A stretch of 64,000 nucleotides of DNA, taken from assembly GCF_030028105.1 (NCBI RefSeq), contig NC_092379.1, positions 25,785,821 through 25,849,820 on the forward strand, given 5' to 3'. Position numbers and translations under genes: made by a program. Under the pieces are notes generated by a model. It was not told where the DNA came from. It saw only the letters and a program-made list of their open reading frames with translations, and ran no database searches. Source of the stretch: Mobula birostris. Taxonomy: Eukaryota. The first letter of the stretch is position 1. Every line of letters begins with the position of its first letter. Positions 2,628 to 63,060 of this stretch are shown here, in pieces.

Positions 2628-2934
2628 GAGCCTTTGGCGTTGAAGAAATGTCGCAGTATCCGCGTGAGTCAACGTTTGAAGAAGGACGAATTTTAACACT
2701 GTCCTGCACGTACCCTGGGTCTTATGATGGTAATACTGCTTTCTGGTACATCCAATCTCCCGGAGGAGCGCCGAGAAATATACTGAGGATTTACAGCAGC
2801 GGCTCCGTAGACCGGTCTGCACAAGCTTCAAAGCGGTTTTCCGCTGTTTATCAGAGAACAAATAAGACGTTACATTTAACAATCGCTGATGTCCTTGTCT
2901 CTGACTCTGCCTCGTATCTCTGCGCAATGATGGC
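2628..2934 (+). CDS. T-cell receptor alpha/delta-type variable segment V1, apparently functional
   Basis: In frame with the leader: GAFGVEEMSQYPRESTFEEGRILTLSCTYPGSYDGNTAFWYIQSPGGAPRNILRIY...RFSAVYQRTNKTLHLTIADVLVSDSASYLCAMM. It has the canonical V-set Cys, Trp and D-x-A-x-Y-x-C, with no stops. TRAV/TRDV-type assignment is inferred from motif style. Confidence 0.9.
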
Positions 2935-2973
2935 CACAGTGTAACAGACAAGGAGTAGACCTGTACAAAAACT
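2935..2973 (+). promoter_or_regulatory. Canonical 23-bp-spacer recombination signal sequence (RSS) of V1
   Basis: CACAGTG (2935-2941), 23-nt spacer, ACAAAAACT (2965-2973). Confidence 0.97.
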
Positions 2974-4679: not shown

Positions 4680-5760
4680 TTCATTTCAAATTATTAGAGG
4701 CACGAGGCAATCTGAGAGACCCTGAATATTCCTAATTTTATCTTACCGCACGACGACCCCTGGCCACCCAGTCTAGGAACCTAACAAGCAATGCCAGGAA
4801 AAAATCTGAATAAGCCATTCACCATTAGCTGTCTTGAAACGCTTTACAGTTATGCCTTTTCATATTTGTCACATCCGACCTGGTATAAATCACTTTGGTT
4901 GTCCACTCTCTCTGTGCTTACTATCATATTGAACCCTTCAATTAAAACACCTGTGACCCCTATTGTCTCCAAGGAAAAGATGCCGAGCTCGCCCAGCGTT
5001 TTCTTATACGAGATGTATTCTATTCCGAATATCAGACTGTTAAAACACCTCTACATCCGCACTAAAGCTCCCATATCCTTCGTATGGAGATGCGACAAAA
5101 AATGGACGCATTCTTACAACACAAAGTATGGTTTAAATACAATTTTACACGGCTGCAATATTACCTTATATTGATCAGTTTCCCGACTAATGAGAGCCAA
5201 GACACTATGGGATTCTATGCATTTAATCAACTTGCTATGCAGCCTTAAGGAGTCTATAAATGTGAAGCCCAAGGTTTCTCTGATCCTTAGCAGTTGATAT
5301 TTTGCGAAAGAACCTCGTATTTTGCATCTCATATGGACATAACATGAAAAATTACTCGCAGCTGCGCATTCCCTGAAAATCCCTCCATACCCTACGGCTA
5401 GAGTCTAAGTAGATCTTTGGATAGTACATTCTTTCCAACGTACCTTCTTAATCTATGTAATCTGTAAAGTTTTTTACGCTCTTTCCCAATTCCCCAGTAA
5501 GGCTATTATTAAAATCGTAAGCAGCAGTTTACGATAGAACATATACCGACGGGGTAATGCTCATCAGACATCTGCATAGAGATGCCATCCAGTTACTAAC
5601 AGTATATACCTTCCGTATTACGATTTCAAGTAGTCAATTTTCTCTGCACATCATAAATTCCAACTCAGCGTACATGAGGATTTTTGACAAATGCCTAGGT
5701 GTTCTCGTGCAGTGTGTTGAAACTGTGATTAAACACCAAGTTAAACCCAAGCCAATGCAG
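4680..5760 (-). mobile_element. Decayed CR1 LINE 3' portion (RT C-terminal region and 3' UTR)
   Basis: Antisense similarity by eye to the better-preserved CR1 copy at 25701-27410; many stops. Confidence 0.55.
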
Positions 5761-5899
5761 ATAGAGTAGTCGTAAGGCTAATCATTCACTCTTCACTCTT
5801 CCACTTTAACATCGCATGGTGAAAACTGTTGATAAAATAATAGAAACATATACAGTGTCGGTTTCATTCTTGAAACCACATTTGCATCGTAAATACTTG

Positions 5900-7050
5900 T
5901 AAAAGTAAAACTATAACAAACTGTATTACAAAGGAGTCTCATTATAGGTACAACATATAGGCCGAATCACTTCAGTATTTATGCAATGTATTGTCCATCG
6001 ACGGTTCTAGGTAGATTCCCACACAATTTTTCCAGGAGTGGGCGTAGGTTTGAAAACAGTCGCTTTCGTCGCCTGCTCCTTGCACCCTCTGAACGAAACT
6101 GCTCTACAGAGAAATTGGTGTTTCTGTCATTGAAATTGCTTCTAGCGGATATGTTGGGTGATTATCAAATTGGTGAAAATTTCGAGACCAGAATCGACAA
6201 CAAACCAGTTATTTATATCCTGGTCTAGGAGGAATTCGATGTCACAGTTCATAGTTTATTGGCGACGTTATTTGCCAGAAATATCAGTCTGAACTACCGG
6301 CTAGGAAGCCGGGACTTTGATACGGAGCCGTTGTACTGACGTTCCCATGAAGGGCCGGGAATAACAAGGCTGGAGTAGGATAGAGTTGTGCATCATTTGT
6401 GAGCTTCTTGTTACGGCATTCCACAAGCTTTCTGCAACTAGAACACCCTGAATTTGAAATAGTTGCTTGCACTCAGCCCTGAAAAAGTTGCAGCGAGGTG
6501 ACCCTTCTACAGGTACCATTTGGTTTGCTCTTGTGTAAAGGGATATAGCCCAGGTTAAAAAGTCGAAGCACTCTACCATACCTCTACTGCTAAGAGCATG
6601 GAACAGATTCGAATAGTGAATCTCGGTTCTATAGAGGGTCACGGCTCTTCCAGACAAGTCTGAGCGTTCCTATATGGCTTTACCTCGGTTGTTTTGAAGT
6701 CACTTCATGCTGTTTAGTAATCATAAAGAAACTTACCTGCGGGGACCGGGATCTTTCCTGCAGATTCCAGCTTTTTATGTGGCCATGTAGCCATGAGACA
6801 GAATGGAGTATTTTCCATTTTCTCTTTGTATTTTCTCTGCCGTAATAGGCAGACATTGATTTCGTGTTACGGAGAATGCTTCAAGAGCACTGAATACTTT
6901 GCAATTATTTTAGGTATTTCCATTTACAAGGGTAAATTGGTCAATACATTATCATGATTATGGACTCTAGTTTGTTTTATGATCGGTAATGAGGGTAAAC
7001 TTATTCCCATATAAGCACTAGTTTTTTTTTTTATGTTATACCTTTCTCAA
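5900..7050 (-). mobile_element. Possible highly decayed Gypsy integrase fragment
   Basis: Weak antisense remnants resembling xNGxVER (~6510-6530) and LYRTxxH motifs. Confidence 0.3.
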
Positions 7051-7509: not shown

Positions 7510-10500
7510 GTTAAAGTTTGGTAACGACGTTACAGTTTAACAAAAGGTAAAATGCATTGTCTATGGTATATCGCGGCATATGATGACGTCTCAGTAGGTT
7601 TCGCCGCATCCTTCGTGTTGCTTCCAATTCGGAGAAGGACAAAAGGTGGGGTCCCACGCGTGCAGCATGAACGTGAAGAGCTCCATGTCTACCCACAAAG
7701 AAACATCATAGAAACAAATCCGTAAGTTCATATGACAGTAGACATGTTGAAGTAAAAAGATATTAATGCGGATTCTGTTAAAGGAAACGATGGTTGATGA
7801 GGGTTATTACTTGTGCCATTGTGAGCATTGCTAGAAACGGTGTGGTGCAGTCTACCTAAAACCGTTGAAGGTCAATACACTGCATAAATGCTTAAGCAGA
7901 TTCTGGCTAAAAGTTGTACCTTTGATGAGACTCATTTTTAATAAAGTTTGATACAGTTTTATTTTTACAATATTTACGATGCAAACGTGCTCTGAAAAAT
8001 GAAGCAGGCACTGAATATGTTTGTATCATTTTGTTAGCAGTATTCACCATACGATGTTAATGTGGAACAGTGAACAGTAAATGGTTAACCTGACGACGAC
8101 TCTGCCTTCATTGGCTCCGGTTTAACTTGGTGTTTAGTCAGCGTTTCAACTCACTGCGCAAGAACATTAAAGTGAAAAGAATGAATCATTAGCTGTTTCG
8201 ACAAATGGTACGATGGCTTCGTGACAAAGCACCAAGTCGTTTGCATCCAGCGCCAAGTGCAGTAGGACGTCGGCAAGTGTGGCTGCCCTTGTAACACCTA
8301 AAGCAGAAGCCGTGAAGTGCTAGCGTCGTACGCTAACCAAGAGGCTAAACTGAAAATGGAAAACGGCTGCCAGAGAAGCGAAAAGTATCACAAGATACGC
8401 ACAAAACCAGATGGAAAATGCTGCCAAAGAAGCGGAAAACTAGTTGGAAAAGCACGGATAGATATAGAGTTAGAAGTGCTGATGCTACAACGAGATGCTG
8501 ATGCAGCCGCAGTGGAAGCACAAGTGTCGGAAAATGCTGAAGAAATGCACTTTCTGGATGAAACACTAACATCGATATCAGAAAGAGCCAAATGGGAACG
8601 CACCAGAGAATATGTTTAATTTCAAATTGACCTGCAGGTTCATTCTCGTTCTCCATACCTGCCTGTTGCTGTTATATCTCATGTGAAATCACGGAGTAAC
8701 TTCGTTGCATCGCGTCCACCTGGGGAAGACAACTCACAACTGCAAACTTGCAACAAAATTAGATATGAGAGGGCTGACTATAGATACTTTCCGACACCAA
8801 ACTTAACAGATCCGGCGAGAGCTGAGACAAAGGCTGAGGTCAGAGCATCAAATCCCATCATGAACGTACATGCTCACTCATATGCCCCAGCATATTCCCC
8901 CACCTAGCACGCCACCAGCAGCAGAACCCTTGACACAGTATTTAGCGCAATGAGACCTCGCCAATTCAGGCTGTACCAGCCTGACAATAAGCCTGAAAAT
9001 TACATTGCATGGTACTCATCATTCACCAGAGCAGCCGGCGGAATCCAGCTGACAGCAATCCATGAGTTGGACCTTATGACTAAATGGCTGGGAAAGAAAT
9101 CAAATGAACAGGTGAAACGCATACGCTCATGTAGGTCAACAACCACAATCTATCTTTACAGAAAGCATGGGAGAGACTTCGGGACTGCTAAGCGGCCCCT
9201 CATATTATTGAGAAGTCGCTATTTCAACGGCTGGACATTTTTTTTTTCTGGGGTGTCAGACAATGACCACACTGAATTACGAAAAATCGGAGATTTACTC
9301 ATGGAGTTTGAAGGTCCCAAAGAAGACGGCTATTTAATTGGTCTGTGGTATCTGGATACTTCACGCGGAATTGGAGCAATTGTGGACAAACTTCTATTTT
9401 GGCTGCTGGAAATCTGGGTGTCTATTGGCTCAGGGTACAAGGAAGAGAACGGTCATCCATTCTTTCCCTTTGTGTATTTATTAGGTTTGTGTGCAAAGAG
9501 GAGAAGTAGCGAAACGCCCCTAGCTTCATGTATCAAGGTAGCTCCACAACTCAATTGAAGCCAGTCAAATCATTTTGAACAATTTTAACGTCAATAAACC
9601 CGTATCAGTACACAAAATCGAAGTCTCCACAACCAATGATCACCCTAGCAAGAATTGTCCATTGCACAACAAACCCCACCCCCTCAGAAATGCTGAATGT
9701 TTAGAAACAAACCCGTTGACGAAAGAATTTCGCTTTGTCAAGGAAAAAAGAATATGTTTTAAGTGCTGTTCCTCTATCTCCAACATCGCGGGTTGTGAGC
9801 ATTTCTACTTGTGCGATGGTGTGTCGGCATCGCTGGGCAATTCGGGCACTACGCGCATGCGCACATACCTGCCCGTGCAAGGCTTCATGGTCATTGTAGT
9901 CCAATCGGGAAAACAAGAAGCGAGCGTCTTTTTTAGTAAAAGCGAAATGTGTCCTCCGTAATTTCGGAGGTCTGTAAAGCTTTATTCAAGCATTGCAAAC
10001 AGATTTGTTTCCCTGCCCTTCTGCCGCCCAATGGGAAGCTATTGCAGCGTAGCATGAAATGCGATGGTACCTAGCGGACCAATCACAGTTCCTAGACGGT
10101 CTGCTTTGACGCGACGCGCGGGTAAATTTTGAGGTTTGCGTCGCTGCAACGCCGACTCAGGCGTAGGGTTCCGCGTCGGTATTGCGTACTTTTTGCGGCG
10201 ACGCAGACCTTCCGACGACATCTTGACGCAGAAGAATAAACAAGGCTTTTAAGGAGCGTATGTTCCCCGTAAAGTGCTTTAAGCACTATGGGGCCATGCA
10301 TCCAGGCCCATCACCGCAAAATGCCAAAGCACATTCACTGTCACAACAGAACGGCGGGAAGGGAGAGGATCACTCCAACATAACTATTGTCAGCTCAAGC
10401 TGCAGAGAAGTTTGCGGTCCAGGTCCGTCCAGCTGTTCGTGCTAAAAAAATCTGCCTCACTCAGGTATAACCTAAGGGAGTCAAATAAAAGGCCATCGAA

Positions 10501-14090: not shown

Positions 14091-15369
14091 TTTAGAAAAG
14101 ATATTTTTGAAATTTAACATTTGTCCGTCCATCTCTCTTTCCAGTCGTCAGGTACCGGGGAAGTACTAAATTTGAATAACTTGCCTGTCAATGGTTCTGT
14201 TCCAAAAAATTGTCCCCTCCTGGTTTTCTTAAATAAACACCCGGCGTTACAGCTACAGGGGAAAAAAAAAGTGACAACAAGGAGGGCCTCGACATCAGGC
14301 CTTCTGGGGAATTTCGGATATCTCGTCACTTCGTCATTCTAACTACATTCCCAGGCCAAAATATGAAAGTTTTGTACGATGTGTACAACTATTTTTCTAA
14401 TTTCCGCTGATCTTCCTGCCGAAGATGGTTTTGCAATTTCTTAAAATATCTCTGTACGCCGGGTTGATAGCCAAGCTTTTAAGTAAACGTTCTCCAACTT
14501 TCTTCTTGCAAAGTCCAATTGGCCTCCTCACAATAGGAGTATCTGCTCCTAGAAGAAATGCAGCTTCACCCTACTCAATCGAAATCCGGTCAGTCTAACA
14601 TTAAGTATCAAGTGGCTCGGCTACTCCAATATCTGCCTCGGAATCTGCAGCTTCAACGACAAAAAAACCATCATACTTGTAGACATAATCATAAAGGCCC
14701 AAAAGCTCCAGTGTACCAGGTGACGTCAATGATAGGTGTTGTGAAATATCTGTTGCGGAATGATCTACACGGTAGAATAAATTGAGTGCCTACTTCAAGT
14801 GTGGGTCTAGCAAAAAATCGTTCAATCTGTCGCGATACGCTGGAGCTTGGACAACTACGCCTTCAGAAAAAGGGTTTCGCACAGTCAATGCTCCTTGATA
14901 CATTGATTGAAGCGTCCAGACCTCACTCCCCCCCCACAACCCGCGAGACACCGGGACGTTCCCTTAGTTGGTCTCTCCATGGTGTCCTGATTTGTCCTTC
15001 TGTTTAGGCAACCGTTGATTGACATTCTGAACTTTTTCCCGTACTTTGCATTATCATTTGAAATGTCGATTCTCATCATAGTTACACAGACAATACTGAC
15101 CGTTCCCCGTTTCAAAGGGACCGTTCAGGAGCAGCTGTCTGCTTCGTACGTCCAGACAGCTGGATCGGCTCCCTGTCGGCTTTCACACGCTTGATGGTAG
15201 GACCTGCCGATATCATCCGGGATACATCGGCTGTATAATATTTCACGAAATCCTGTGAAACTTCTATTGCGTGACAACAGGAATCTGTTCAGCAACAGGG
15301 GCCACTACCGAGGAATGTGCCCTGATCACGGAGGCCTCCTGCTCCTTCAGAACGTTTATCCATTTCTTA

Positions 15370-15595
15370 TGCAAACAACAGGAATTCTGCAGATGCTGGA
15401 AATTCAAGCAACACACATCAAAGTTGCTGGTGAACGCAGCAGGCCAGGCAGCATCTGTAGGAAGAGGTGCAGTCGACGTTTCAGGCCGAGACCCTTCGTC
15501 CTGACGAAGAGTCTCGGCCTGAAACGTCGACTGCACCTCTTCCTACAGATGCTGCCTGGCCTGCTGCGTTCACCAGCAACTTTGATGTGTGTTGC
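15370..15595 (+). mobile_element. Young 226-bp PLE-type insertion forming a long hairpin, with 13-bp TSD
   Basis: TSD TATCCATTTCTTA at 15357-15369 and 15596-15608. Inverted arms 15407-15500 and 15503-15596 (the last base overlaps the TSD) have one mismatch. Confidence 0.92.
15498..15531 (+). ncRNA. Minimal type-I hammerhead ribozyme motif
   Basis: gtc-CTGACGA-agagtctcggcct-GAAAC-GTC-gac. Stem I is gtc/gac, with conserved cores CUGANGA and GAAA, a palindromic ACGU in place of stem III, and predicted cleavage after 15528. Stem II carries one G>A change. Confidence 0.7.
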
Positions 15596-16049
15596 TATCC
15601 ATTTCTTACCTAGCTGATCAGTTCAAGAAACGACGGGGGGCGGGGGGCATCCTCCGGGAAATAGAGTCGCTTAATGAATCACATAACTTGTCTGGGCGCC
15701 CTTTCGCCATTCAGCCAGATGAAAGTCTCCTTTTAGCCGCAAGCAAAGCAACTGTCTGTCTAGTAGAAAAAGTGTAGTCAGAATGCTAAAATAAAAATTG
15801 CAAATATCCGATATAAGCTCCATTGCACTTCCCGTCGAGGCGAAAACGCTTTCTAGCGCTTGCAAGTTGCACGCAGAAGTGGCGAATTATTTGTCCTTCT
15901 TCAATAAGCTTGCTATTTCAGCAGCCGGACCCTTCAGACTCTCTGTCAGTCGCTGTATTTTCACATTATCGGAGCACTGCCACTAATCCAGTATGTTTTA
16001 GATGTCTACTCCGCCGAAGCCACATATTTCTCCTATCCCTCGCTGTTGG

Positions 16050-19904: not shown

Positions 19905-20042
19905 NNNNNNNNNNNNNNNNNNNNNNNNNNNNNNNNNNNNNNNNNNNNNNNNNNNNNNNNNNNNNNNNNNNNNNNNNNNNNNNNNNNNNNNNNNNNNNNN
20001 NNNNNNNNNNNNNNNNNNNNNNNNNNNNNNNNNNNNNNNNNN
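19905..20042. other. N gap or masked tract within an AG-rich repeat, upstream of V2
   Basis: Ns flanked by gagagagacagcgagac and gatagataaagatagaagagacagag. Confidence 0.95.
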
Positions 20043-21239: not shown

Positions 21240-21660
21240 GCGAATCCAATCTGATGACATGAATATTCATTTCTCAAACTTACCATAATGCCTCCACTAC
21301 TTCACTATTTTCCGTCCTATTTTCACTCTCATGTTATCACCTAGCCCACGAATATCTTCCGTCTGGTGCTCCTCCCCCTTCCCTTCTTTTATTTCTTCTA
21401 AGGCCTTGTGTCCTTCTCGCTTTGCTCTTTGCTTTATTTCTCCCCCTTCAGGGTTAACTTATCTCCTGGTTTTACTCTCTCTCCTCCCACACCTTTCAAA
21501 TCTATTCCTCAGTATTTTTTTTCCTTCCTTTTCTCCGCAGTCCTGGAACATCGGCTGTATTTTTTTTTCTTTTCTTTTGATATGCCTGGCATTTTAGGTT
21601 TATCTAGCGGTTTTTTGTTGCCAGGTTTACCAGCATCTGCAGATTTTTACTTGTTTTCAG
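21240..21660 (+). mobile_element. PLE terminal fragment inserted into the V2 downstream flank
   Basis: Pyrimidine-rich tract ending ...ccagcatctgcagatttttacttgttt, the family 3' end. No counterpart was seen in the V1 flank. Confidence 0.6.
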
Positions 21661-22649
21661 TATAAAGCGGAGTCAGACAAATATTTTATATGTATAATAT
21701 TAGTATCATATGAATATCAATATCTTAGTAAAATACTATCGTGAGAGGACTGTCCTGGTACTGTTTGGAAGATTTGCGTGACTAATAATCGGCGCTTCTC
21801 TGGACTATTATTTGCTCATATATCGCAGCTGATACTGTTCACGTCTGCAGCAAACTGTTCCTGTGATGCCAAACCTGCTTCAATCACACGGATATTGGAA
21901 AGCAGAAACGAATGCCTTCTCTGACAGCGTCCCATGACTGTGGTTTTAGATCGGACCTTTAAGTTAATTATTTAAAAGAGCTGCATTGGTAAGCAGTCCG
22001 TAATATCTTTGGACAGGTTGATGCGTCATGGTAAAAGGACAGCGGTGCAATATATCCACCCTAAATTGAGCTGAATTGCGAGGAACATTGCAATATCTGT
22101 CTCTATTTTCGTTGGCTTCCCCGCTACGTATCCTGCCGGAGATTTCTAATCAGAGACACTGCATTTTCTTTATCCAATCCAGTCTGAAATTCGCATTTCA
22201 ATGAGGCGCCTTTTGGTTCTGCAACCAGCTCCATGTTCTCCATAGACGCCATTGATACTCTATGTGTTTTAGGGTAATATGACTCGCGCTTGAGCTCCAG
22301 TCTTCTATAGTTGCTGTACCTCGTTGGACACTATTTAGTCGGCATACCTGCTACACACAAAGAGATCTCAATTTGTCATATTGGCAACGATAGCCCCCCA
22401 TGACTTATTACAGTCGCTTCGATATACTTTGAGACTGCTGCAGAAATCATATTTTCATATCAAATCTGAATAACATTGCTAAAATTTGTATATATTGAAC
22501 ATCTCTGACTTGCTCGGAAGAATATCTATGATTAATTCGATATTTACATTAGTATTGGATTGTGCAGGACCTTGGGCCTACAATATTAGCTCGCCCTGTT
22601 AACCGCACACAATCAATTTAACCGTCTATCTCGTATAAATTTCAATTAT

Positions 22650-25700: not shown

Positions 25701-27410
25701 TAGAACCATAGAACCATAGAAACAGCAGCACGGAAACAGGCCTTTTGGCCCTTCTTGGCTGTGCCGATCCATTTTCTGCCTAGTCCCACTGATCTGCACA
25801 CGGACCATATCCCTCCCTATTCCTCCCATCCATGTATCTGTCCAATTTATTCTTAAATGTTAAAAAAAAGAACCCGCATTTACCACCTCAGCTGACAGCT
25901 CATTCCATACACCCACCACTCTCTGTGTGAAGAAGCCCCCTCCTAATGTTCCCTTTAAACTTTCCCCCCCTCACCCTTAAACCATGTCCTCTGTTTTTTT
26001 TTGTTCTCCCCTTGCCTCAGTGGAAAAAGCCTGCTTGCATTCACTCTATCTATAGCCATCATAATTTTATATACCTCTATCAAATCTCCCCTCATTCTTC
26101 TACGCTCCAGGGAATAAAGTCCTAACCTATTCAACCTTTCTCTGTAACTGAGTTTCGCAAGTCCCGGCAACATCCTTGTAAACCACCTCTGCACTCCTTC
26201 AACCTTATTTATATCCTTCCTGTAATTTGGTGACCACAATTGAAAACAATACTCCAGATTCGGCCTCACCATTGCCTTATACAACCTCATCATAACATTC
26301 TAGCTATTATACTCGATAATTTGATTAATAAAGGCCAATGTACCAAAAGCTCTCCTTACGACCCTATCTACGTGTGACGCCACTTTTAGGGAATTTGGTA
26401 TCTGTATTCCCAGATCCCTCTCTTCTACTGCACTTCTCAGTGCCCTACCATTAATCCTGTATGTTCTACCTTGGTTTGTCCTTCCAACGTGCAATACCTC
26501 ACACTTGTCAGTATTAAACTCCATCTGCCATTTTTCAACCCATTTTTCCAACTGGTCCAAGTCCACCTGCAGGCTCTGAAAACCTTTCTCACTCTCTACT
26601 ACACCTCCAATCTTTGTATCATCAGCAAATTTGCTGATTCAATTTACCTCATTATCATCCAGATCATTGATATAGATGACAAATAACAATGGACCCAGCA
26701 CTGACACCTGTCGCACACCACTAGTCACAGGCCTCCACTCAGAGAAACAATTCTCTACTACCACTCTTTGGCTTCTTCCATTGAGCCAATGTCTAATCCA
26801 ATTTACCACCTCTCCATGTATACCTAGCGACTGAATTTTCCTATCTAACCTCCCACGCGGGAACTTGTCAAAGGCCTTACTGAAGTCCATGTAGACAATA
26901 TCCACTGCCTTCCCTTCATCCACTTTCCTGATAACCTCCTCGGAAAACTCCAATAGATTGGTCAGACATGACCTACTACGCTCAAAGCCATGTTGACTCT
27001 CCTTAATAAGTCCCTGTCTATCCGAATGCTTGTAGATTCTGTCTCTTAGTACTCCCTCCAATAACTTACCTACTACCGACGTTAAACTTACCGGCCTATA
27101 ATTTGCCGGATCACTTTTCGATTCTTTTTTAAACAACTTAACATCATGAGCCACTCTCCAATCCTCCGGCACCTCACCTGTAGACAGCGACATTTTAAAT
27201 ATATCTGCCAGGGCTCCGGCATTTCAACACTAGTCTCCTTCAAGGTCCGAGGGAACACCCTGTCAGGTCCCGTGGAGTTATCCACTTTAATTTTCCTCAA
27301 GACAGCAAGCACCTCCTCCTTTTCAATCTGTACAGTCTCCATGATCTCACTACTTGATTCCCATAATTCCATAGACTTCATGCCAATTTCCTTAGTAAAT
27401 ACAGACGCAA
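25701..27410 (-). mobile_element. 5'-truncated CR1 LINE (RT domain and 3' UTR)
   Basis: Minus ORFs NYRPVSLTSVVGKLLE, SQHGF..RSCLTNLLEF, VYMDFSKAFDK, SVLGPLLFVIYINDLD and LYKAMVRPNLEYCFQLWSP. The 3' tail is (TTCTATGG)n, read at 25701-25723. Confidence 0.95.
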
Positions 27411-31600: not shown

Positions 31601-33396
31601 ATTCCATATCTGATTGTCAACAACGTTTGCCATTTCCTCCGGTCCCCAGCAACAAGCATTCAGCATGTGCCCTGACCTTTCAGATTTCAAAAAAAAGTAT
31701 CACTCGCTTAAAACAATGTTGCAGGCTCGATTTGTATTGCCTTATCAATCTCCCGCCACTGATCTCTGCAACCGAGCCACGTTTTGCAGTTAACGTAAAA
31801 CATCACCCCTTTCCAGCCCTCAGGACACTTGCCAGTCCATCGAGGTGAAGGAAAGTTTGACTTCACTATCCGTCGCTATCATTAAGCGTATGAGGTAGCC
31901 CTCATTCGTGTGCAGTCTCAGTTTCATCGCTGAAACTTGTCCTAGCATGGACTTTGCTTCCTAAGCAGCTGTGCTTCGCGTGCGGCAGCAGACAATTTCT
32001 TCTGGACGTGAACGCATTTAACTGCATTTCCGACACCCACAACAGCGTTTCTCTCTGCGTCCTTATGCATTGCACGTCTAGCGGAGAGGCATATTCTGTA
32101 AGTAATATTCGGTATTGAAATCTCCACAAACCTTATTTCACCTGGAAACCTACTATTTTTTGAAACGGGAACCTGTTTATCGTTGCTATGGTTAATAATA
32201 GATGAAGCAAGAACAATATTTTTTACTTTGTCCGCACACATAAAAAAAAACAAAACAAAAAAAAAAAACATCCTGTCTTATTCTGTTCCCGGCTGCTAAT
32301 TATTGGTCTAAAGAGACAATGAAACAATCACGATACACACATATATAAGGTGAACAATTTATTTGATATTCATTCTTTAGCTTTACCTTCAGAGGACATA
32401 TAGAATCCGTACATTAAAATGTGTCCAAGTATTTTTCCTGCGGCATTGACCATAGACATAGGGGCAGAATTGGGCCAGTTGGTCCATCGTGACTGGTCCA
32501 CCATTCAGTCAATGCTGATCTACTTTTCCTATAGTCAGCTCCACTCCCAAGCCATTTCCCCGTAACATTTGATACCTTGCCTAATCAAAAACCCATCAAC
32601 CTCTGCCTTAAATACACTCAACATCCTAGCCTCCAAAGCTAACTGTCGAATCAAATTCCACAATTTCAACACTTTCCAGCTGAAGAGATGTCTCTGTAGC
32701 GCTGCTGATACTGGACTGCCCTCAATCATGATGCAGTGTCTTTTTCTCGTGGGCTCCCCCCACCCCCCAAAGGAAACATTCTGTTTACGTCAACTATATT
32801 TATGCCTTTTAAAATTCGAAATGACTCAGTGAGATCACCCCGATCCTCCTCAATTCAGTGAGTACAGACGCAGAGCCATCAAATATAAAACTTCTTTTTT
32901 TCCGGAAACAGCCTTATGAACCTCCTCTGAACGCAGGCCGATGTCAGCCCATCTTTCCTTATATGATGAGCCAAAAACAGTTCGCTATACCCGAGGTGAG
33001 TCCTCACTAGTGTCTTATGAAGCCACAAAATCAGATACCTGCGTTTATATGCCTGACCTGTTGAAATGAATGCTTACATTCGATTTGCCATCCTCACCAC
33101 TGACACAACCTGCAAACTAATTGTCAAAGTTTTCTACCTAAACATGCCGCTACCCTTGTATCACATATGCTTGGATTCTCTCCCACTGTTAGAAAATAGT
33201 CTGCACTCCTATTCTACCACTAAAATACAAAAACATGCAGTTTCCAACACTGTTTCTCATTTGTCATTTCCTCGTCAATTATCCTATTCTGTCTAAGTCC
33301 TTCCGTTGCCTATCTACTTCCTCAAAACTACCTGCCCTTCCGCCAATATCCGTGTCATTTGGAAACTTGGCAGAAAAGCCAGCTATTCCAACATTT

Positions 33397-33516
33397 CCTT
33401 CCTTCACTCTTCCTTCAGTTAGTTCTGACGAAGGGTCTCGGCCTGAAACGTCGACTGCACCTCTTCCTAGAGATGCTGCCTGGCCTGCTCCGTTCACCAG
33501 CAACTTTGATGTGTGT
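33397..33516 (+). mobile_element. Young 120-bp hammerhead-containing insertion with 13-bp TSD
   Basis: TSD TATTCCAACATTT at 33384-33396 and 33517-33529. Near-identical to the right arm of the 15370 element. Confidence 0.92.
33420..33457 (+). ncRNA. Minimal type-I hammerhead ribozyme motif
   Basis: tagtt-CTGACGA-agggtctcggcct-GAAAC-GTC-gactg. Stem I tagtt/gactg pairs with two G.U wobbles, stem II is agg/cct, and predicted cleavage is after 33452. Confidence 0.75.
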
Positions 33517-34915
33517 TATTCCAACATTTAAATCGTTGACATATAGCATAAAAATAGCAGTCCTAACACATAACCCTACGGAACACCATCAGACGAGGAT
33601 CCTTTCTTTCCCACTCACTACCGCCTACCAAGGAGCTAATGCTTTAACCATGCCAGTAACGTCCCTGCAATGCGAAAGACTTTTAACTAGATAAGCAGCC
33701 TCATATGTGGCACCTTGCCAACGGCATTCCTAAAAGTACAAATATGTAACATCCTCTCCTTCCTACTTTACCCATATTGCTTGTAAACACCTCATTTAAT
33801 TCTTTACGGTACTTCCACCAAGATTTCCCTCTAAGAAAACGATGCTGGCATTGTCATCTTCTCTGGTGCCATCAAACACTAAATAGCCTCATCCTTAATA
33901 ATTGACTCCAACCTCTTACCAAGTAGTGAGATCAAGGTACCTGCTCTATATTTCTTTTTCTTTCCTTTTCTTTTTTTTTCTTTTCTGCTGCCCTCTTCTA
34001 TTTAATAAAGAGTTGGGTGGCCTATGCAATTTTGCAGTCCTTTGGTAGCAAGCCAGAGTCCATCGATTTTTGAAAGATCATTTTAATGAGCTCACAATTT
34101 CTAGTATTACCTCTTTCAGAACTCCAGAGTTCAGTTCTTCTATCTGGGTGAGTTATCTACCCTCAGGATATTTAGCTTTTTCAACACATTCTCACTTATA
34201 TGTGCACTCATTTCTCTCACGGCACACACATCAACATCTGAAACATTGCCTGTGTCATCCACAGCGAGGACTAATGCAAAACACACATTTATTTCCTCTG
34301 CAATCTCTTTGAAATGCGCTGTTATTTCTGCGGCCTCAGTTACTAGCAGCCATATACCCACACTCTTCACTCATATAATTTTATAATCCTGAAAAAAATA
34401 CTGTCCACTTTAATATTGTTTAATGGGTTGCATTGATATTTCATCTCTCCCCTACTAATGGGTACTTCAGTTGCTCTTTACAGGGTTTTAAAATGTACCC
34501 AATCTTTTATTTACCCGCTATTTTTTGCTTTGCTGTGTGACCTCTCTCTTGCTTTTCACATTAGCTTTGACATCCCTTCTCAGTGGGTTCCACACAAGCT
34601 ACCACGTCAATCCTCTCTTCAGCAATGCAGCTTGAAAACGTTTCCTTCAACATCTGAACATTTCATTTCAACTAGATACAGAGTTTCACACTGCCGTCAC
34701 TGAAGCATTCAACCTCAGGATAAAAATATTTTGAATCGAAATATGATGTAATGTGCGAGCCCTTAACGTATGGTGCAGTGGAATGTTATTTCCAAGTCTA
34801 TGTTTTCGATAACCTCAGATTCAATAGTTCCGACGGTTCCCTCTCAGTTGAGAAAACATCTTTATCTGTGGATACTTACAAATTGTCAGAAAGTCCCACA
34901 TTCGGGACGATAAAA

Positions 34916-38509: not shown

Positions 38510-41360
38510 CTTCAGATGAATACGAATTGGCAAATATGATGTTGTAGGAATAACAGAGACATGGCTGTAAGAGAACCAGGGCTACGAAATGGATATTCAA
38601 GGGTATACGTCCTATCGAAAGGACAGACCGGTGGGCAGAGAGTGTGGGGTGGTTCCGTTGGTAAGGAATGAAATTCAGAGCCCTGCGAGGGGCGACATAG
38701 AATCAAGAGGTGTAGAGTCAGTATGGATAGAACTGAGAAATTGTAAGGGCAAAAAAACCCTAATGGGAGCTGTCTGCAGGCCCCCAAACAGTAGCCTAGA
38801 CATAGGGTGCAAGTTAAATCAAGAGTTACAATTGGCAAGTCGCAAAGGTAATGCTACGGCTGTTATGGGAGAATTTAACATGCAAGTATACTGGGAAAAT
38901 CAGGTTATACTGGACTCTAAGAAAGGGAGTTTGTGGAGTGCCTCCGGGATGGATTCTTAGAGCAGATTGTACTGAAACCTACCAGGGAGATGGCATTTCT
39001 GGATTTAGTGTTGTGTAATGAAACGGATTTAATAAGGGAACTCGAGGTAAAGGAGCAATTAGGAGGGTGTGACCATAATATGACAAGTTTTAAACTAGAG
39101 TTTCAGAGGGAAAAGGGAAAATCGGAAGTGTGAGTATTGCAGTTGCACAAATGGGGACTATGGAGCCATGTGGGAGAAGCTGACCAAAGTAGACTGGAAA
39201 AAATACCCTGTCAGGGATGACAATGGAACAACAATGGCAGGTATTTCTGGGAATTATACCGAAGGTGCAGGATCAGTTCATCCCAAAGAGGAAGAAAGAT
39301 TCCACAGGGAATAAGGGGCGACCGTGGCTGAAAAGGGAAGTCATGGACAGTATAAAAATAAATGAGAAGAAGAATAACATAGCAAATATCAACGGGAAGC
39401 AAGATGACCGGGGAACTTTTAAAGAGCAACAGCGGATAACTAAAAAGGCAACACGGGGAAAAAATATGAGATACAAAGGCAACCAAGCCAAGAATGTAAA
39501 GGAGAACAGTAAAAGCTTCTTTAGGCATCTGAAGAGGGAAACAAATAGTTCAGAACAAACTTTGGCCCTTGAAGACAGAAACGGGTGAATTTATGATGGG
39601 GAACAAGAAAATGGCAGACGAGTGAACAGGTACTTTGGATCAGTCTTCACTAGGGAAGACACACACAATCTCCCATATGTAATAGAGGCCGGAGCACCTA
39701 GAGTAACGGAGGAACTGAAGGAGATTCACATTTGGCAGAAAATGGCATTGGATAGACCGATGGGACTGAAGGCTGATAAATCCCCAGGGCTGATGGTCTG
39801 CAACACAAGGTACTTAAGGAGGTGGCTCTAGACATCGTGGAAGCATTGGTAATATTTTTTTCCAAAGGTCTATAGATTCAGGATCTGTTCCTGCGGATTG
39901 CAGGGTAGCTAATGTTATCCAACGTTTCATGAAAGGTGGGAGAGATAGAACAGGGAATTAAAGACCAGTTAGCCTGACATCAGTAGTGGGGAAGGTGCTG
40001 GAGTCAATTATAAAGGATGAAATAGCGGCACATTTGGATAGCAGTAATAGGATCTGTCCGAGTCAGCATGGATTTACTAAGGGGAAATCATGCTTGACAA
40101 ATCTGCTGGAATTTTTTTGAGGATGTAACTATGAAAATGGACATGGGAGAGGTAGTGGGTGCGGGGTACCTGGACTTTCAGGATGCCTTTGAGAAGTTCC
40201 CACATCGGAAATTAGTGGACAAAAATATACCACATGGCATTGCTGGTAGGGTACTGACATGGATAGAAAATTGGTTGGCAGACAGTCCACAAAGAGGAAG
40301 GATTAACGGGTCCCTTTCAGAATGGCAGGCGGTGAAAAGTGGGGTACCGCAAGGCTCGGTGCTGGGACCACAGCTATTTACAATATACATTAATGATTTA
40401 GATGAACGGATTAAAAGTAACATTAGCATATTTGCAGATCACAAAAAGCTGGTTGGCAGTGTGAAATGTGCGGAGGATGTTGAGATACTGCAGAATGTCT
40501 TGGACAGGTTGGGTGAGTGGGCAGATGCATAGCAGATGCAGTTTAATGTGGATAAATATGAGGTTATCCACATTGGTAGCATGAACAGGAAGGCAGATTA
40601 CTATTTGAATGGTGTCAAGTTAGAAAAAGTCAAAGTACAACGAGATCTTAGTGTCCTTGTTCATCAGACACTGAAGACAAGCATGCAGGTACAGCAGTCA
40701 GTGAAGAAAGCTAATGGCATGTTGGCCTTCATAATAAGGGGAATTGAGTATAGGGGCAAAGAAGTCCCTCTGCAGTTGTACAGGGCCCTAGTGAGATCAA
40801 ACCTAGGTTATTGTGTAGAGTTGTAGTCTCCAAATTTGAGGAAGGACATTTTTGTTATTGAGGGATTGTGACGGAGGTTCACGAGGTTAATTCCCGCGAT
40901 GGCAGGACTGTCATATGTTGAAAGATTGGAGCGACTGGGCTTGTATACACTGGCATATAGAAGGAGGAGAGAGGATCTGATTGAAACATATAAGAGTACG
41001 AAGGGAATGGACACGTTACAGGCAGGAAGCATGTTCCCGATGTTGGGGGAGTTCAGAACCAGAGGTCACAATTTGCGAATAAGAGCTTGGCTATTTAGAA
41101 CGGAGATGAAGAAAACTTTTTCTCCACGAGAGTTGTGGATCTGTGGAATGCTCTGCCTCAGAAGGCAGTGGAAGCCAATTCTCTGGATTCCTTCAAAAAA
41201 GAGTTAGATAGACCTCTTAATGATAGCGGAGTCAAGGGATATGGGGACAAGGCAGGGACAGGGAACTGTTTGTACATGATCAGCCATGATCGCAGTGAAT
41301 GGTGGTGCTGGCCCGAACAGCCGAATGGCCTCCTCCTGCACCTATTGTCTATTGTCTGTT
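38510..41360 (+). mobile_element. CR1 LINE ORF2 (endonuclease plus RT), degenerate
   Basis: YDVVGITETWL, VESVWIELRN, LDLVLCNE, YLDFQDAFEK, SGVPQGSVLGPQLFTIYINDLD, IFAD. Tail ctattgtctattgtct at ~41342-41357. Confidence 0.95.
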
Positions 41361-46631: not shown

Positions 46632-47229
46632 TATTTTTGGTGTGTATTTTATTATGGGTTATGGTAATTTGTCATCTGCGTTGGGGCATGGTACAAGCAA
46701 TTGATTATTTTCACGTATTATCCTTTTGTGACGTTAGTTTAGTTTATTTTGCGAGAAAATTCATTGAATATTTTTCAAGGATTCTTTTGTTATTTTGAAT
46801 GTCTTGCGCAGTTTGCTTATTCCGTTATTTTTTCCTGCTAATTACGCTAGGTTCATTAATATGACTAATTTTGATAGTTAACCTTTGCTAGTTTGGTAAT
46901 GAAGTATAGCATGTCCTTATTTTGATATGGAACTCAGTTATTTCGAAGCGGTCATATAATGTGGATTCCGTCAATCAGTGTCTGAAAGATATTTATCCGT
47001 GTTTCATTTGGTTAAGGTAGCAGCGGAAATACTGATCGGCTGAGGTTTCCCTCGTGTGTTGATGCTCACTAATGCAGAAAGATAAAGGAATTTCGAATGT
47101 CTGTGCATACCTCTGGAGCAACTAAATTACCGATCTGAGGCAGTGTTGTCCCTAAGAAATGTGCAGAAGATAATGAAGAAAAGTTAATATCTGAAACGTT
47201 GAATAGTGAGTTATCAATGAGGAACATAA

Positions 47230-47330
47230 GGAAATCTGCAGTTGGTAGAAATTCAAGTCAATACGCAAAATGCTACAGGAATACAGCAGGTCAAGCAGCA
47301 TCTATGTAAAGCGTTAAAAGTCGGAGTTTG
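47230..47330 (-). mobile_element. Decayed PLE terminal fragment
   Basis: tctgcagttggtagaaattcaagtcaatacgcaaaatgct...cagcaggtcaagcagcatct resembles 15385-15460. Confidence 0.6.
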
Positions 47331-48192
47331 GTCCAGGATTATTTTGCACGAGAATGCATTGTTTGCATTGCTTCTATGTTGAAAGCTGACTTGTATCAGT
47401 GTCACCTGAGCAAGAAGCGGTCTCTCGCTATCATGACGCTCAATCAATTAGTGCTAAAGGCTGTTGACAATTCTCATACTGGATAAGAAACACAAATAGT
47501 GCTCTGACTGTGCACCAAAGGTGCAATGAGAGAAAACATGAAGGATGTGGCTGTGCATCAAGGTATAGCTTCAGTAGAGACGATGCTCTGTTGGTAATTG
47601 TCCACTAAATCTGATACTTTCAAGTTCATTATGACAATGCAGGTTAGTCCATAGACTAGCAGAGGTGTCCTCTCCACAGTGACGACTATATATAATCATT
47701 TAAGAATGTTGAGTCCAATAGTGCTGATCGGAAAATTCTACAGCATTTAAGTAAAGAAAAAAAAAAAAAAAAAAGCTTGGCTAGACTGACACTGTTGGGA
47801 CGTCAGTTGTTCACCAGTGCACAACCTGGCTGGAAGATCTCTATCAGTAGGAAGGCTCTAAATTCGTTTAATGTTTGCAGCCACTGGATTATGGAGAATT
47901 TAGTTTTGCACAGTTCCAACGGTTTCAGACGTATGTGAAAATACGCCCTCTAAGGTGCATAGTGTTTTTATCATGGGATTTGCAAGCTAGCTTCTTTGAA
48001 GTTAGTTTCCATCGTTGTATAGCTCCTGCTGTCATAAAGGCAACCCGTACTGCGACATTACGAGGGAATGAGTTGCACATGCTGCTTCCTGATTCAATGT
48101 ATTGGGCTGATAGCACCTCTCAAAGCAAGTATAGGACGAAAGAAAGTTACAGGTTTAGACCCTTCGTTGCAGTAGAGGTTCCGGAAATTCTT

Positions 48193-61419: not shown

Positions 61420-61800
61420 TCACACATAAAAACAGAACTCCTTGAGTATGTAACGCCTGTGTTCTTGAACTCTATTTCACCTACCTCTCATTATGCCCAA
61501 TCTATCTCAGCATCACGAAAAATCCATCGCTCATCCAATTCCAGCTTCACCTCCTTAAAACTAATTGTAAGAAGCTATAATTGCATAAATTTCACCCATA
61601 AGTAGTCGCCAGTGACACCGGAGGTTTCCCAGTGCTTTATCATCCCGTCAGGAAAGCAGTCATATTTTCAGGTCCTGTTGAATGATCTCGGACAGAAACA
61701 TCCACGGCTTACTCTTCCCCATACATGTTTCATGGCCTGCCCGAGCTACCACGGCATTGTGTGTGCATTGAGTTCAAGTATTCTGCCTGACATCATTAAA
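61420..61800 (-). mobile_element. CR1 ORF1 N-terminal (zinc finger/leucine zipper) remnant
   Basis: Antisense ETSGVTGDY...LQLL...KEVKLELDE resembles the shark-type CR1 ORF1 start. Confidence 0.5.
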
Positions 61801-63060
61801 ATGCATTCTTAACAAATATAGAAAAGGAAAAATATATATATACTATTGGAAAAAAAAAACTTGCCTACAACTTTGTCTCATTTTCTTACTCCGGCCGATT
61901 CTCGCTAAAGCATCGAAGAGGCAATATGTCAAGTTTTCACTCTAACAATTTCGACTCCACGGATGACTGCTCCACATTCCGCTATTTTTTTTAATATAAA
62001 TTTGATCTTGTCATTCAATCCATATCGCTCTTCAAAACGAGAAGCTGTCGTGAATTGATGGGTTATGCATGCAAATCGGCGAACCTGAGAGCCCCGTCTT
62101 GTCAGCCTTGGGATCTTCGAATGGCCGCAGTTTAAATCACCAAAACGCTTAAAATCGATACCTTATGTTCTCAATCAGCGTACCTGGTTCCGCTATGTCT
62201 TCTCGTGTTTCGTATCTCCGATGAGCCTCTGTTTAAGCATCAAACAGCCGCCAGCTGATGCCTTGTATACTCGATAGGCAAACTTGAATGATTCCATCCT
62301 CTCGCGCTTCGGTCTCATTTCCATCAGTTTGCTTACGCTGTCTTTCCGTGTTTGCGGAGCCCATTTTTACTTAGAACATTTTCTGTTTGTCTATCTAATT
62401 ATTTATCTGTGCGTTTGTTTATTTATTTGCTAAGATCTCAGTACCCCTGGTGGCTCCATTCTTTTGATTATTAAAGAAAATTCTGTAACAACGGAGGTAC
62501 AAGAAAATTAAAGCTCTGTATACTGTTTTCCGTAAGATCTGACAGAACCCTAATCTACTCACTGAATCAAAGATAAATCCACGCCATATAATAAGTAATA
62601 AAAAAACACAGCCGGAGCATTTGTCTTCAATTCGACGGTGGCGCTTCACATTTCCAGTTTTCGCTTAATCATCAACTTTTCCCAGCCTCACCAGAGTTAA
62701 ATAAATATTTTGCTTTGTTATTTTCGCTCTGGCGAGTAGTTCCTCGTAAACATAAATTGTTTTATTTGCCACTGCCTTGTGTATACCATGTGGCCTTTTA
62801 CCTCTGGTCCTTTAGGTAGAACAGAGAACACAGTATAGTACAGCTTGGAGTCCGCACAGCACGATCCACGCCAGACCGATATAAATCACTCCACGATCAA
62901 ACCACAACTACATAACACTCTGCACATAGTTTTATCCTCCATTGATCCAATATCCTTAACGAAACTATTAAACATCAATTCATCAGCCTCCATTGGCAAT
63001 AGTTACTAGAAAATATAAAAGATAATTTTACAGGAGGTTCCCATTCGAATACTCCACGGG

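What the first reader, a model, noticed from the sequence alone, without database searches (positions are those of the whole stretch)
15357..15608. Young 226-bp retro-insertion forming a 94-bp-arm hairpin with a hammerhead ribozyme at its centre
Seen: a perfect 13-bp TSD, inverted arms with a single mismatch and a 2-nt loop, and a CUGACGA...GAAAC-GUC core starting in the loop. Only the plus strand has a complete core, and the inversion point falls inside stem I/core of the ribozyme. Known: Penelope-like elements carry minimal type-I hammerheads thought to cleave as dimers and often insert with inverted termini. Inference: a recently active non-autonomous PLE-type or retrozyme-like element. Its transcript would fold into long dsRNA that sequesters the ribozyme, and the DNA could extrude a cruciform inside a RAG-targeted locus.
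Basis: partly seen in the sequence, partly recalled or inferred. Interest (0 to 1): 0.75.

Follow-up and report, generated by a model that had tools for sequence, protein, structure and literature searches.

The report
Head-to-head Penelope retrotransposon stub pair
This small palindromic insertion is real and young. It is the usual by-product of one Penelope-like retrotransposon integration: two heavily shortened copies laid down head-to-head, each carrying a crippled remnant of the element's hammerhead motif. It is not a new ribozyme-bearing hairpin element.

Summary
A 226-bp insert (15370-15595) sits between perfect 13-bp target-site duplications. It holds 94-nt inverted arms with one mismatch and a 2-nt spacer, and a CUGACGA...GAAAC-GUC motif starts in the spacer.

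The anatomy says this is two 5'-truncated copies of one repeat family joined head-to-head, not one hairpin element:
- The right copy ends at the same 3' terminus as a solo 120-bp copy at 33397-33516.
- The left copy carries an extra 38-nt "tail", which older solo copies in the window also have.
- Published work names an inverted 5'-truncated copy, a 30-40-bp tail at one end only, variable duplications and AT-rich targets as the signature of Penelope-like elements. A purified Penelope-like element protein nicks and extends both target strands from two adjacent start sites.

Neither strand has an intact hammerhead:
- The minus copy lacks C3 and U4.
- In the plus copy the single arm mismatch (15510, position 10.2) breaks helix II.
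- Helix III is a loop-less ACGU that needs a second sense copy, and there is none in cis.
- The whole RNA folds into a -200 kcal/mol hairpin.
- Rfam gives no hammerhead hit.

The scan has already reported such stub pairs elsewhere in this genome. Reads and orthologue checks could not be run. One detail is unexplained: both copies stop within 2 nt of the ribozyme's 5' edge.

The parts
15357..15369 (.). Left target-site duplication, TATCCATTTCTTA (77% A+T, contains ATT)
15370..15500 (-). Left copy of the hammerhead-tail repeat (131 nt; the hammerhead sense is on the minus strand). It is 5'-truncated at G5 of the CUGANGA box, so C3 and U4 are missing. Helix II is intact.
15370..15407 (-). 38-nt optional 'tail' at the 3' end of the left copy only. 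The same tail is present in old solo copies at about 47.2 kb and 21.6 kb.
   Evidence: PMC8557442, PMC11167929, PMC3846280 for the PLE tail
15501..15595 (+). Right copy (95 nt), 5'-truncated exactly at C3 of the box. It ends at the no-tail terminus ...GTGTGTTGC, within 2-3 nt of the terminus of the solo copy at 33516.
15501..15528 (+). Minimal hammerhead motif. CUGACGA lies at 15501-07, a bulged A at 15508, helix II at 15509-20, GAAA at 15521-24, the loop-less palindromic helix III ACGU at 15524-27 and C17 at 15528. Position 10.2 (15510) is A instead of G, which breaks helix II.
   Evidence: feature list from PMC4209133
15475..15500 (-). Hammerhead remnant of the left copy. Helix II, GAAA and GUC are intact, but the box reads AGGACGA because C3 and U4 are replaced by the spacer.
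15596..15608 (.). Right target-site duplication, identical to the left one
33397..33516 (+). Solo 120-bp copy of the same family, 97.8% identical to the arms. It starts 28 nt upstream of CUGACGA, has an intact motif and no tail, and is flanked by the 13-bp duplication TATTCCAACATTT (33384-96 and 33517-29).
47205..47360 (-). Old diverged solo copy (about 71-75% identity) that includes the tail
21510..21680 (+). Old diverged solo copy that includes the tail
61640..61810 (+). Old diverged solo copy with a decayed hammerhead region

Best explanation
The 226-bp insert is the product of one integration event of a Penelope-like retrotransposon (PLE). It consists of two extremely 5'-truncated copies of the element's 3'-terminal module (hammerhead motif, then about 67 nt, then the reverse-transcription start site), laid down head-to-head between staggered nicks 13 bp apart.

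Most likely route (inferred): the PLE protein nicked both target strands, and each 3'-OH primed cDNA synthesis on hammerhead-sense RNA. The top strand primed at the distal start site, which gives the 38-nt tail on the left copy. The bottom strand primed at the proximal start site, which gives no tail on the right copy. Both cDNAs stopped at the 5' edge of the hammerhead box and were joined blunt, by template jump or end joining.

The result was dead on arrival. It has no ORF and no second sense hammerhead for the obligatory dimer. One copy has a truncated catalytic box and the other a broken helix II. It has no function of its own. Its only plausible effects are side effects of being a near-perfect 93-bp palindrome: hairpin RNA if it is read through, and DNA fragility.
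For: Shown here:
- A perfect 13-bp duplication and tight inverted arms.
- The two halves have different 3' ends. The right half ends at the same terminus as the solo copy at 33397-33516. The left half extends 38 nt further, with sequence that old solo copies also carry. So the right arm's outer end is a genuine element terminus, and the left arm cannot have been copied from the right.
- The spacer CT equals C3 and U4 of the right copy's natural sequence.
- There is no poly(A). The two duplications are A+T-rich against a 58% window (77% for this insert; 9 of 13 bases, 69%, for TATTCCAACATTT, counted by eye) and both contain ATT.
- The geometry fits: both duplication-bearing 3' ends point into the insert, as dual target priming requires (read).

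From the literature:
[quoted passage not shown] - A purified PLE protein cleaves and extends both strands, starts reverse transcription at two adjacent internal sites whose spacing equals the tail, and prefers ATT or AT-rich targets. The hammerhead is not needed for insertion (PMC11167929).
Against: - No PLE ORF (RT plus GIY-YIG) lies in the window. The RT fragments tested here are LINE-type or unclassified. The link to an autonomous PLE therefore rests on the structural signature and the motif class.
- G10.1 pairs with U, not the conserved C11.1.
- Two independent cDNAs stopping within 2 nt of each other needs a hot spot or a defined RNA 5' end, neither of which is shown.
- Independent reads or an orthologous empty site could not be examined.
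Confidence: 0.78

Rival explanations
1. One cDNA, self-primed (snap-back). A single copy with the tail was reverse-transcribed. Its 3' end folded back at the hammerhead edge and copied itself, giving the second arm. This is the self-priming model proposed for palindromic PLE junctions.
For: Arkhipova et al. 2013 interpret the frequent palindromes at inverted PLE junctions as self-priming (PMC3846280). It would explain directly why both arms stop at nearly the same base and differ at only one position.
Against: - The nascent cDNA end has no self-complementarity to prime from, and a 2-nt loop is too tight.
- The spacer CT matches the right copy's own natural upstream bases. A chance match has probability 1/16.
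- Fold-back copying should have continued through the 38-nt tail into the flank. Instead the right arm stops at the canonical no-tail terminus seen in the solo copy.
Confidence: 0.12
2. One reading: the 226-bp hairpin is itself a copy of a non-autonomous, retrozyme-like or MITE-like family whose master has this fold-back structure.
For: The insert is young, has a duplication, and its right end is a legitimate reverse-transcription start site. A 2026 preprint argues that animal retrozymes derive from PLE pseudo-LTRs. Earlier scan notes list several fold-backs of about 200 bp in this genome (unverified).
Against: - There is no second copy of the unit or of its junction in the window. All other family members here are solo and non-palindromic.
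- There are no tandem sense repeats and no two sense hammerheads, so the retrozyme definition is not met.
- The inverted repeat does not reach the left terminus, where 38 nt are unpaired, so these are not terminal inverted repeats.
- A 13-bp duplication is atypical for DNA transposons.
- Earlier notes report fold-backs from about 200 to 905 bp. That fits independent truncation events better than one master, though those notes are unverified.
Confidence: 0.06
3. Assembly or fold-back sequencing artefact.
For: PLE tandem and inverted structures are known to trouble assemblies (PMC8557442). No read-level check was possible.
Against: - A perfect 13-bp duplication abuts both ends.
- The arms are asymmetric, with a family-specific tail on one side.
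- There is one arm mismatch.
- The nearest N run is more than 4 kb away, at 19905.

An artefact would not create a duplication or a canonical element terminus.
Confidence: 0.03

Closest known systems
Canonical PLE insertion architecture (Penelope/Poseidon/Neptune): pseudo-LTR plus an adjacent inverted 5'-truncated copy plus an optional 30-40-bp tail (Evgen'ev & Arkhipova 2005; Arkhipova 2013, PMC3846280; Craig 2021, PMC8557442)
   Same: Head-to-head inverted copies within one duplication. A 38-nt tail at the 3' end of only one of them. Extreme 5' truncation. No poly(A). The hammerhead motif in the terminal repeat.
   Different: Both copies are truncated to about 95-131 nt, so no ORF or pseudo-LTR body remains. 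The two truncation points coincide at the ribozyme edge. The autonomous partner was not seen in this window.
PLE minimal hammerhead ribozymes (Cervera & De la Pena 2014, PMC4209133; Lunse et al. 2017, known to me only as cited in PMC6765202)
   Same: CUGANGA and GAAA boxes. [quoted passage not shown] A loop-less palindromic helix III (ACGU) that implies dimers. A short helix I (5 bp in the solo copy).
   Different: G10.1 pairs with U rather than the conserved C11.1. In the finding itself, one copy lacks C3 and U4 and the other has A at 10.2. No Rfam model recognises either copy.
In vitro PLE integration (Poseidon from Anolis; Frangieh et al. 2024, PMC11167929)
   Same: Both target strands are nicked and extended. 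There are two adjacent internal RT start sites, and the interval between them is the tail. Targets are ATT or AT-rich. The hammerhead lies a short distance upstream of the start sites.
   Different: In Anolis the ORF's AUG lies inside CUGAUGA. Here the box is CUGACGA, with no AUG. The RT start region is GU-rich in the sense strand, whereas the paper describes an AC-rich stem-loop. The distances differ: 67 nt from cut site to terminus here, against about 85-92 nt.
LINE-1 twin priming inversions (Ostertag & Kazazian 2001; from my own knowledge)
   Same: The second target strand primes a second cDNA, giving an inverted 5' segment within one duplication.
   Different: In L1 the two segments come from different parts of the RNA, and the 3' end carries poly(A). 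Here both arms cover the same segment and both outer ends are element 3' termini.
Metazoan non-LTR retrozymes (Cervera & de la Pena 2020, PMC7229834; Li et al. 2026 preprint)
   Same: A short non-coding sequence with a type-I hammerhead, related to PLE pseudo-LTRs.
   Different: Retrozymes are head-to-tail tandem repeats whose sense hammerheads excise circRNAs. Here the copies are inverted, so no transcript carries two sense ribozymes.

Membership tests
Penelope-like element insertion | An inverted 5'-truncated copy directly adjoining the 5' end of another copy, within one target-site duplication | tested here: met
   Left copy 15370-15500 (-) and right copy 15501-15595 (+), head-to-head, flanked by a 13-bp duplication; definition from PMC8557442 and PMC3846280
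Penelope-like element insertion | An optional 30-40-bp tail at only one end of the insertion | tested here: met
   A 38-nt extension on the left copy only (15370-15407). The same sequence is present in old solo copies and absent from the solo copy at 33.4 kb.
Penelope-like element insertion | Heavy and variable 5' truncation; no poly(A) or microsatellite tail | tested here: met
   Copies start at C3, at G5 and at -28 relative to the box. Their 3' ends are ...GTGTGTTGC...GTGTGT and ...TGTTTGCA.
Penelope-like element insertion | AT-rich target with an ATT motif | tested here: met
   Both young duplications are A+T-rich against a 58% window: 77% for TATCCATTTCTTA and 9 of 13 bases (69%) for TATTCCAACATTT (counted). 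Both contain ATT. Two sites only, so this is weak.
Penelope-like element insertion | The family is linked to an ORF with a telomerase-like RT and a GIY-YIG endonuclease | not testable with these tools
   No such ORF among 31 window ORFs of 98 aa or more that were scanned. The RT fragments are LINE-type or unclassified.
PLE minimal hammerhead (Cervera & De la Pena 2014) | CUGANGA and GAAA boxes with an NUH cleavage triplet | tested here: met
   Plus strand 15501-15528 and the solo copy 33425-33452. The minus-strand copy fails: its box reads AGGACGA.
PLE minimal hammerhead (Cervera & De la Pena 2014) | [quoted passage not shown] | tested here: inconclusive
   The bulged A is present (15508). G10.1 is present but pairs with U11.1 as a wobble. 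Helix II has 4 bp in the solo and left copies (-2.3 kcal/mol) and does not form in the right copy.
PLE minimal hammerhead (Cervera & De la Pena 2014) | Palindromic 15.2-16.2, or a loop-less helix III that needs a dimer | tested here: met
   ACGU at 15524-15527, with no loop
Hammerhead ribozyme, Rfam models | A covariance-model match | tested here: not met
   No hammerhead family at gathering score or at E<=10, for the finding or for the solo copy. This is expected for loop-less helix III variants.
Hammerhead ribozyme (activity) | Self-cleavage after C17 | not testable with these tools
   Needs in vitro transcription. In silico, the hammerhead-like fold is -0.5 kcal/mol against -199.9 kcal/mol for the hairpin.
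Non-LTR retrozyme | Head-to-tail tandem units, each with a sense hammerhead | tested here: not met
   The copies are inverted, and there is no direct tandem.
MITE / fold-back DNA transposon | Inverted repeats that reach both termini, and a short duplication of fixed length | tested here: not met
   The left 38 nt lie outside the inverted repeat, and the duplication is 13 bp.

The most novel reading that the evidence does not exclude
The coincidence of both truncation points at the 5' edge of the hammerhead box could reflect a real rule of PLE copying. The segment from the ribozyme to the start site would then be a discrete module, bounded by a defined RNA 5' end or an RT strong stop at the protein-bound hammerhead. 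Head-to-head pairs would arise when the two RTs of a dimeric particle run off that end and jump onto each other's cDNA. As a corollary, such near-perfect palindromic stubs, when read through, would yield hairpin RNAs that target the very module the element needs, a self-generated silencing trigger.
Probability: 0.12. Interest if true: 0.5.

Novelty: new member of a known kind. Interest (0 to 1): 0.2.

Why it matters
Mostly as a clean negative. The striking 'ribozyme in a hairpin' is an ordinary by-product of Penelope-like element integration, and annotators of ray and shark genomes should mask it as such rather than call it a new element or a miRNA-like hairpin.

It is also an unusually legible natural example of three things recently shown in vitro for a PLE protein: extension from both target strands, the two reverse-transcription start sites (tail against no tail) within a single event, and an AT-rich target.

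The shared stop at the hammerhead edge is a small open point about PLE mechanism. A genome-wide tally could settle it.

Tried and rejected
- Rfam at gathering score and at E<=10, on the finding and on the solo copy. No hammerhead hit. The miRNA-family hits are generic long-hairpin matches well below their gathering scores.
- Two pattern scans of metagenome contigs with a 26-nt and then a 19-nt motif of the repeat. The first found 0 loci and the second 39. All 39 are 20-25-nt chance matches in unrelated contigs, and none extends to the family.
- A search for a paralogous empty site in the window found none; the flanks are unique.
- A search for a PLE ORF in the window. Pfam on 31 ORFs gave only RVT_1 fragments, a weak APE-endonuclease hit and the V-set domain. 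One RT is LINE-1/R2-like by PDB sequence search, and one gave no PDB match.
- An open frame runs through the 161-nt composite unit, but it has no ATG and is not significant for 53 codons.
- The predicted hairpins at the two 3' termini are not better than shuffles.
There is no read-level, expression or polymorphism test.
After that I sent no further letters of 15000-16000 to any search tool; one search used the copy at 33.4 kb and was blank.
- Lunse et al. (PMC5785218) is not held. It is cited only through PMC6765202.

Full report

Yes. Reading 15200-15760 and the repeat finder show:
- the 13-bp direct repeat TATCCATTTCTTA at 15357-15369 and 15596-15608;
- between them a 226-bp insert (15370-15595);
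- inside it, inverted arms 15407-15500 and 15503-15596, 94 nt and 99% complementary, separated by 2 nt (CT).

The single mismatch is 15493 C against 15510 A. A whole-window scan finds no other tight palindrome. The nearest N run is more than 4 kb away.

The motif CTGANGA-N(8-20)-GAAACGT occurs twice in 64 kb, against 0.06 expected: at 15501-15527 and at 33425-33451. On the minus strand of the finding the box reads AGGACGA. The CU of that box is the 2-nt spacer.

**2. What the insert is made of**

A BLAST of the left part against the window, reading of the second locus and an alignment show that the insert is two copies of one repeat family. The coordinates below follow the hammerhead-sense orientation.
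- The right copy (15501-15595, +) starts at C3 of the box and ends ...GTGTGTTGC.
- The left copy (15500 down to 15370, minus strand) starts at G5. It runs through the same sequence and then continues for 38 more nucleotides, to ...TGTTTGCA.
- A solo copy at 33397-33516 (+) is 97.8% identical and has its own 13-bp duplication, TATTCCAACATTT. It starts 28 nt upstream of the box and ends ...GTGTGT, within 2-3 nt of the right copy's end.
- Three old, diverged solo copies lie at 47205-47360 (-), 21510-21680 (+) and 61640-61810 (+). Two of them include the 38-nt extension, so that extension is family sequence and not target DNA.
- None of the solo copies has an inverted partner.

The family therefore has two alternative 3' termini 38 nt apart and variable 5' starts. 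The finding is a head-to-head pair in which one copy uses each terminus.

**3. Which family**

I could not reach the rest of the genome. Two metagenome pattern scans returned only chance matches.

The window has no PLE ORF. Among the ORFs scanned with Pfam there are only RT fragments. One of these is LINE-1/R2-like, and one sits near a weak APE-endonuclease hit.

The assignment therefore rests on a structural signature that the literature describes as specific to Penelope-like elements:
- Craig et al. 2021: insertions are highly 5'-truncated. [quoted passage not shown]
- Arkhipova et al. [quoted passage not shown]
- Frangieh et al. [quoted passage not shown] It starts reverse transcription at two adjacent internal sites whose interval 'clearly corresponds' to the tail, and it prefers AT-rich targets with ATT. 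The hammerhead lies just upstream and is not required for insertion (PMC11167929).

The finding shows every one of these features: head-to-head copies, a 38-nt tail on one side only, no poly(A), and A+T-rich duplications that contain ATT (77% for this insert; 9 of 13 bases for the solo copy's duplication, counted).

**4. The ribozyme motif**

I tested the motif against the features listed for PLE minimal hammerheads (PMC4209133).
- Both boxes are present.
- The extra unpaired nucleotide after A9 is present (A, 15508).
- Helix III is the loop-less palindrome ACGU (15524-27), which can only form between two sense copies.
- Helix I is 5 bp in the solo copy.
- G10.1 pairs with U rather than the conserved C.

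In the finding itself no copy is intact:
- The minus-strand copy lacks C3 and U4.
- In the plus-strand copy the one arm mismatch is position 10.2 (G to A), and predicted helix II vanishes (0.0 against -2.3 kcal/mol).
- Its helix I is a fortuitous 3 bp supplied by the inverted arm.
- A hammerhead-like fold scores -0.5 kcal/mol, against -5.9 for the solo copy.
- The full transcript folds into a -199.9 kcal/mol hairpin (z = -26.5).
- Because the two copies are on opposite strands, no transcript carries two sense motifs, so the dimer requirement cannot be met in cis.
- Rfam finds no hammerhead.

But there is no working ribozyme to sequester.

**5. How it arose**

Shown:
- Both duplication-bearing 3' ends of the target point into the insert.
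- Both outer ends of the insert are element 3' termini.
- The inner ends are 5' truncations.

Inferred:
- Both nicked target strands primed cDNA synthesis on hammerhead-sense RNA, one from the distal start site and one from the proximal start site.
- The two cDNAs were then joined.

The junction is blunt. The left copy's templated sequence ends at 15500 and the right copy's begins at 15501, with no shared bases. That fits a template jump or end joining rather than annealing.

The self-priming (snap-back) model of Arkhipova 2013 is the main rival. It would explain the near-identical stop points. However:
- The nascent end has no self-complementarity.
- A 2-nt loop is too tight.
- The spacer equals the right copy's own C3 and U4.
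- Fold-back copying should have run through the tail, instead of stopping at the canonical no-tail terminus.

I put dual priming well ahead of snap-back. Only a genome-wide tally can decide between them.

**6. What remains unexplained**

Two independent cDNAs ending 2 nt apart is unlikely without a hot spot. An earlier follow-up in this scan (s1-145545) reports that short stubs of this family tend to start at the upstream edge of the hammerhead. In this window two of three young starts do, and those two belong to one event. A defined RNA 5' end or an RT stop at the protein-bound motif would explain it. Neither is shown.

**7. Context and consequences**

The window holds a TCR-type V segment (2648-2944; V-set E = 1.9e-14) with a 23-spacer RSS at 2935-2973. 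Earlier notes place the window in a ray TCR locus. The insert lies 12.4 kb from that RSS, in unique non-coding sequence.

As DNA, the arms could form a -129 kcal/mol hairpin per strand. From general knowledge, palindromes of this size with tiny spacers are fragile, and that fits its apparent youth: a perfect duplication, one arm difference, and all five CpGs per arm intact. Nothing links it to RAG activity.

**8. Verdict**

It is wrong where it posits a distinct hairpin or retrozyme-like element with a live ribozyme. This is a new instance of a known kind, and earlier work in this scan reports such pairs elsewhere in the same genome (s1-145291, s1-145502, s1-145600; those notes are unverified by me). 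Interest is low, apart from the small mechanistic puzzle of the shared stop point.

Noticed in passing
window 5700-5909 and 7957-8166: 210-nt inverted arms, about 82% identical, 2047 nt apart, with no other copy in the window. Possibly an old long-TIR DNA transposon or an inverted duplication.
   Followed up: partly
window 33384-33529: Solo 120-bp copy of the same hammerhead-tail family, with an intact motif, no tail and the 13-bp duplication TATTCCAACATTT. It shows the family was recently active, and it defines the no-tail terminus.
   Followed up: yes
window 15370-15440 (minus strand): The two alternative 3' termini of the family each sit at the 3' foot of a similar predicted hairpin (6-bp stem, 10-nt loop). 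This recalls the stem-loop RT start site reported for the Anolis PLE, but it is not significant against shuffles.
   Followed up: partly
window 26639-27193 (-), 40131-40532 (+), 51602-53564 (+): LINE-type reverse-transcriptase fragments. One is LINE-1/R2-like by PDB search, and one has a weak APE-endonuclease hit upstream. No GIY-YIG or PLE ORF was seen.
   Followed up: partly
window 2648-2973 (+): TCR-type V segment (V-set domain, ...YLCA end), directly followed by a 23-spacer RSS with one mismatch to the consensus.
   Followed up: partly
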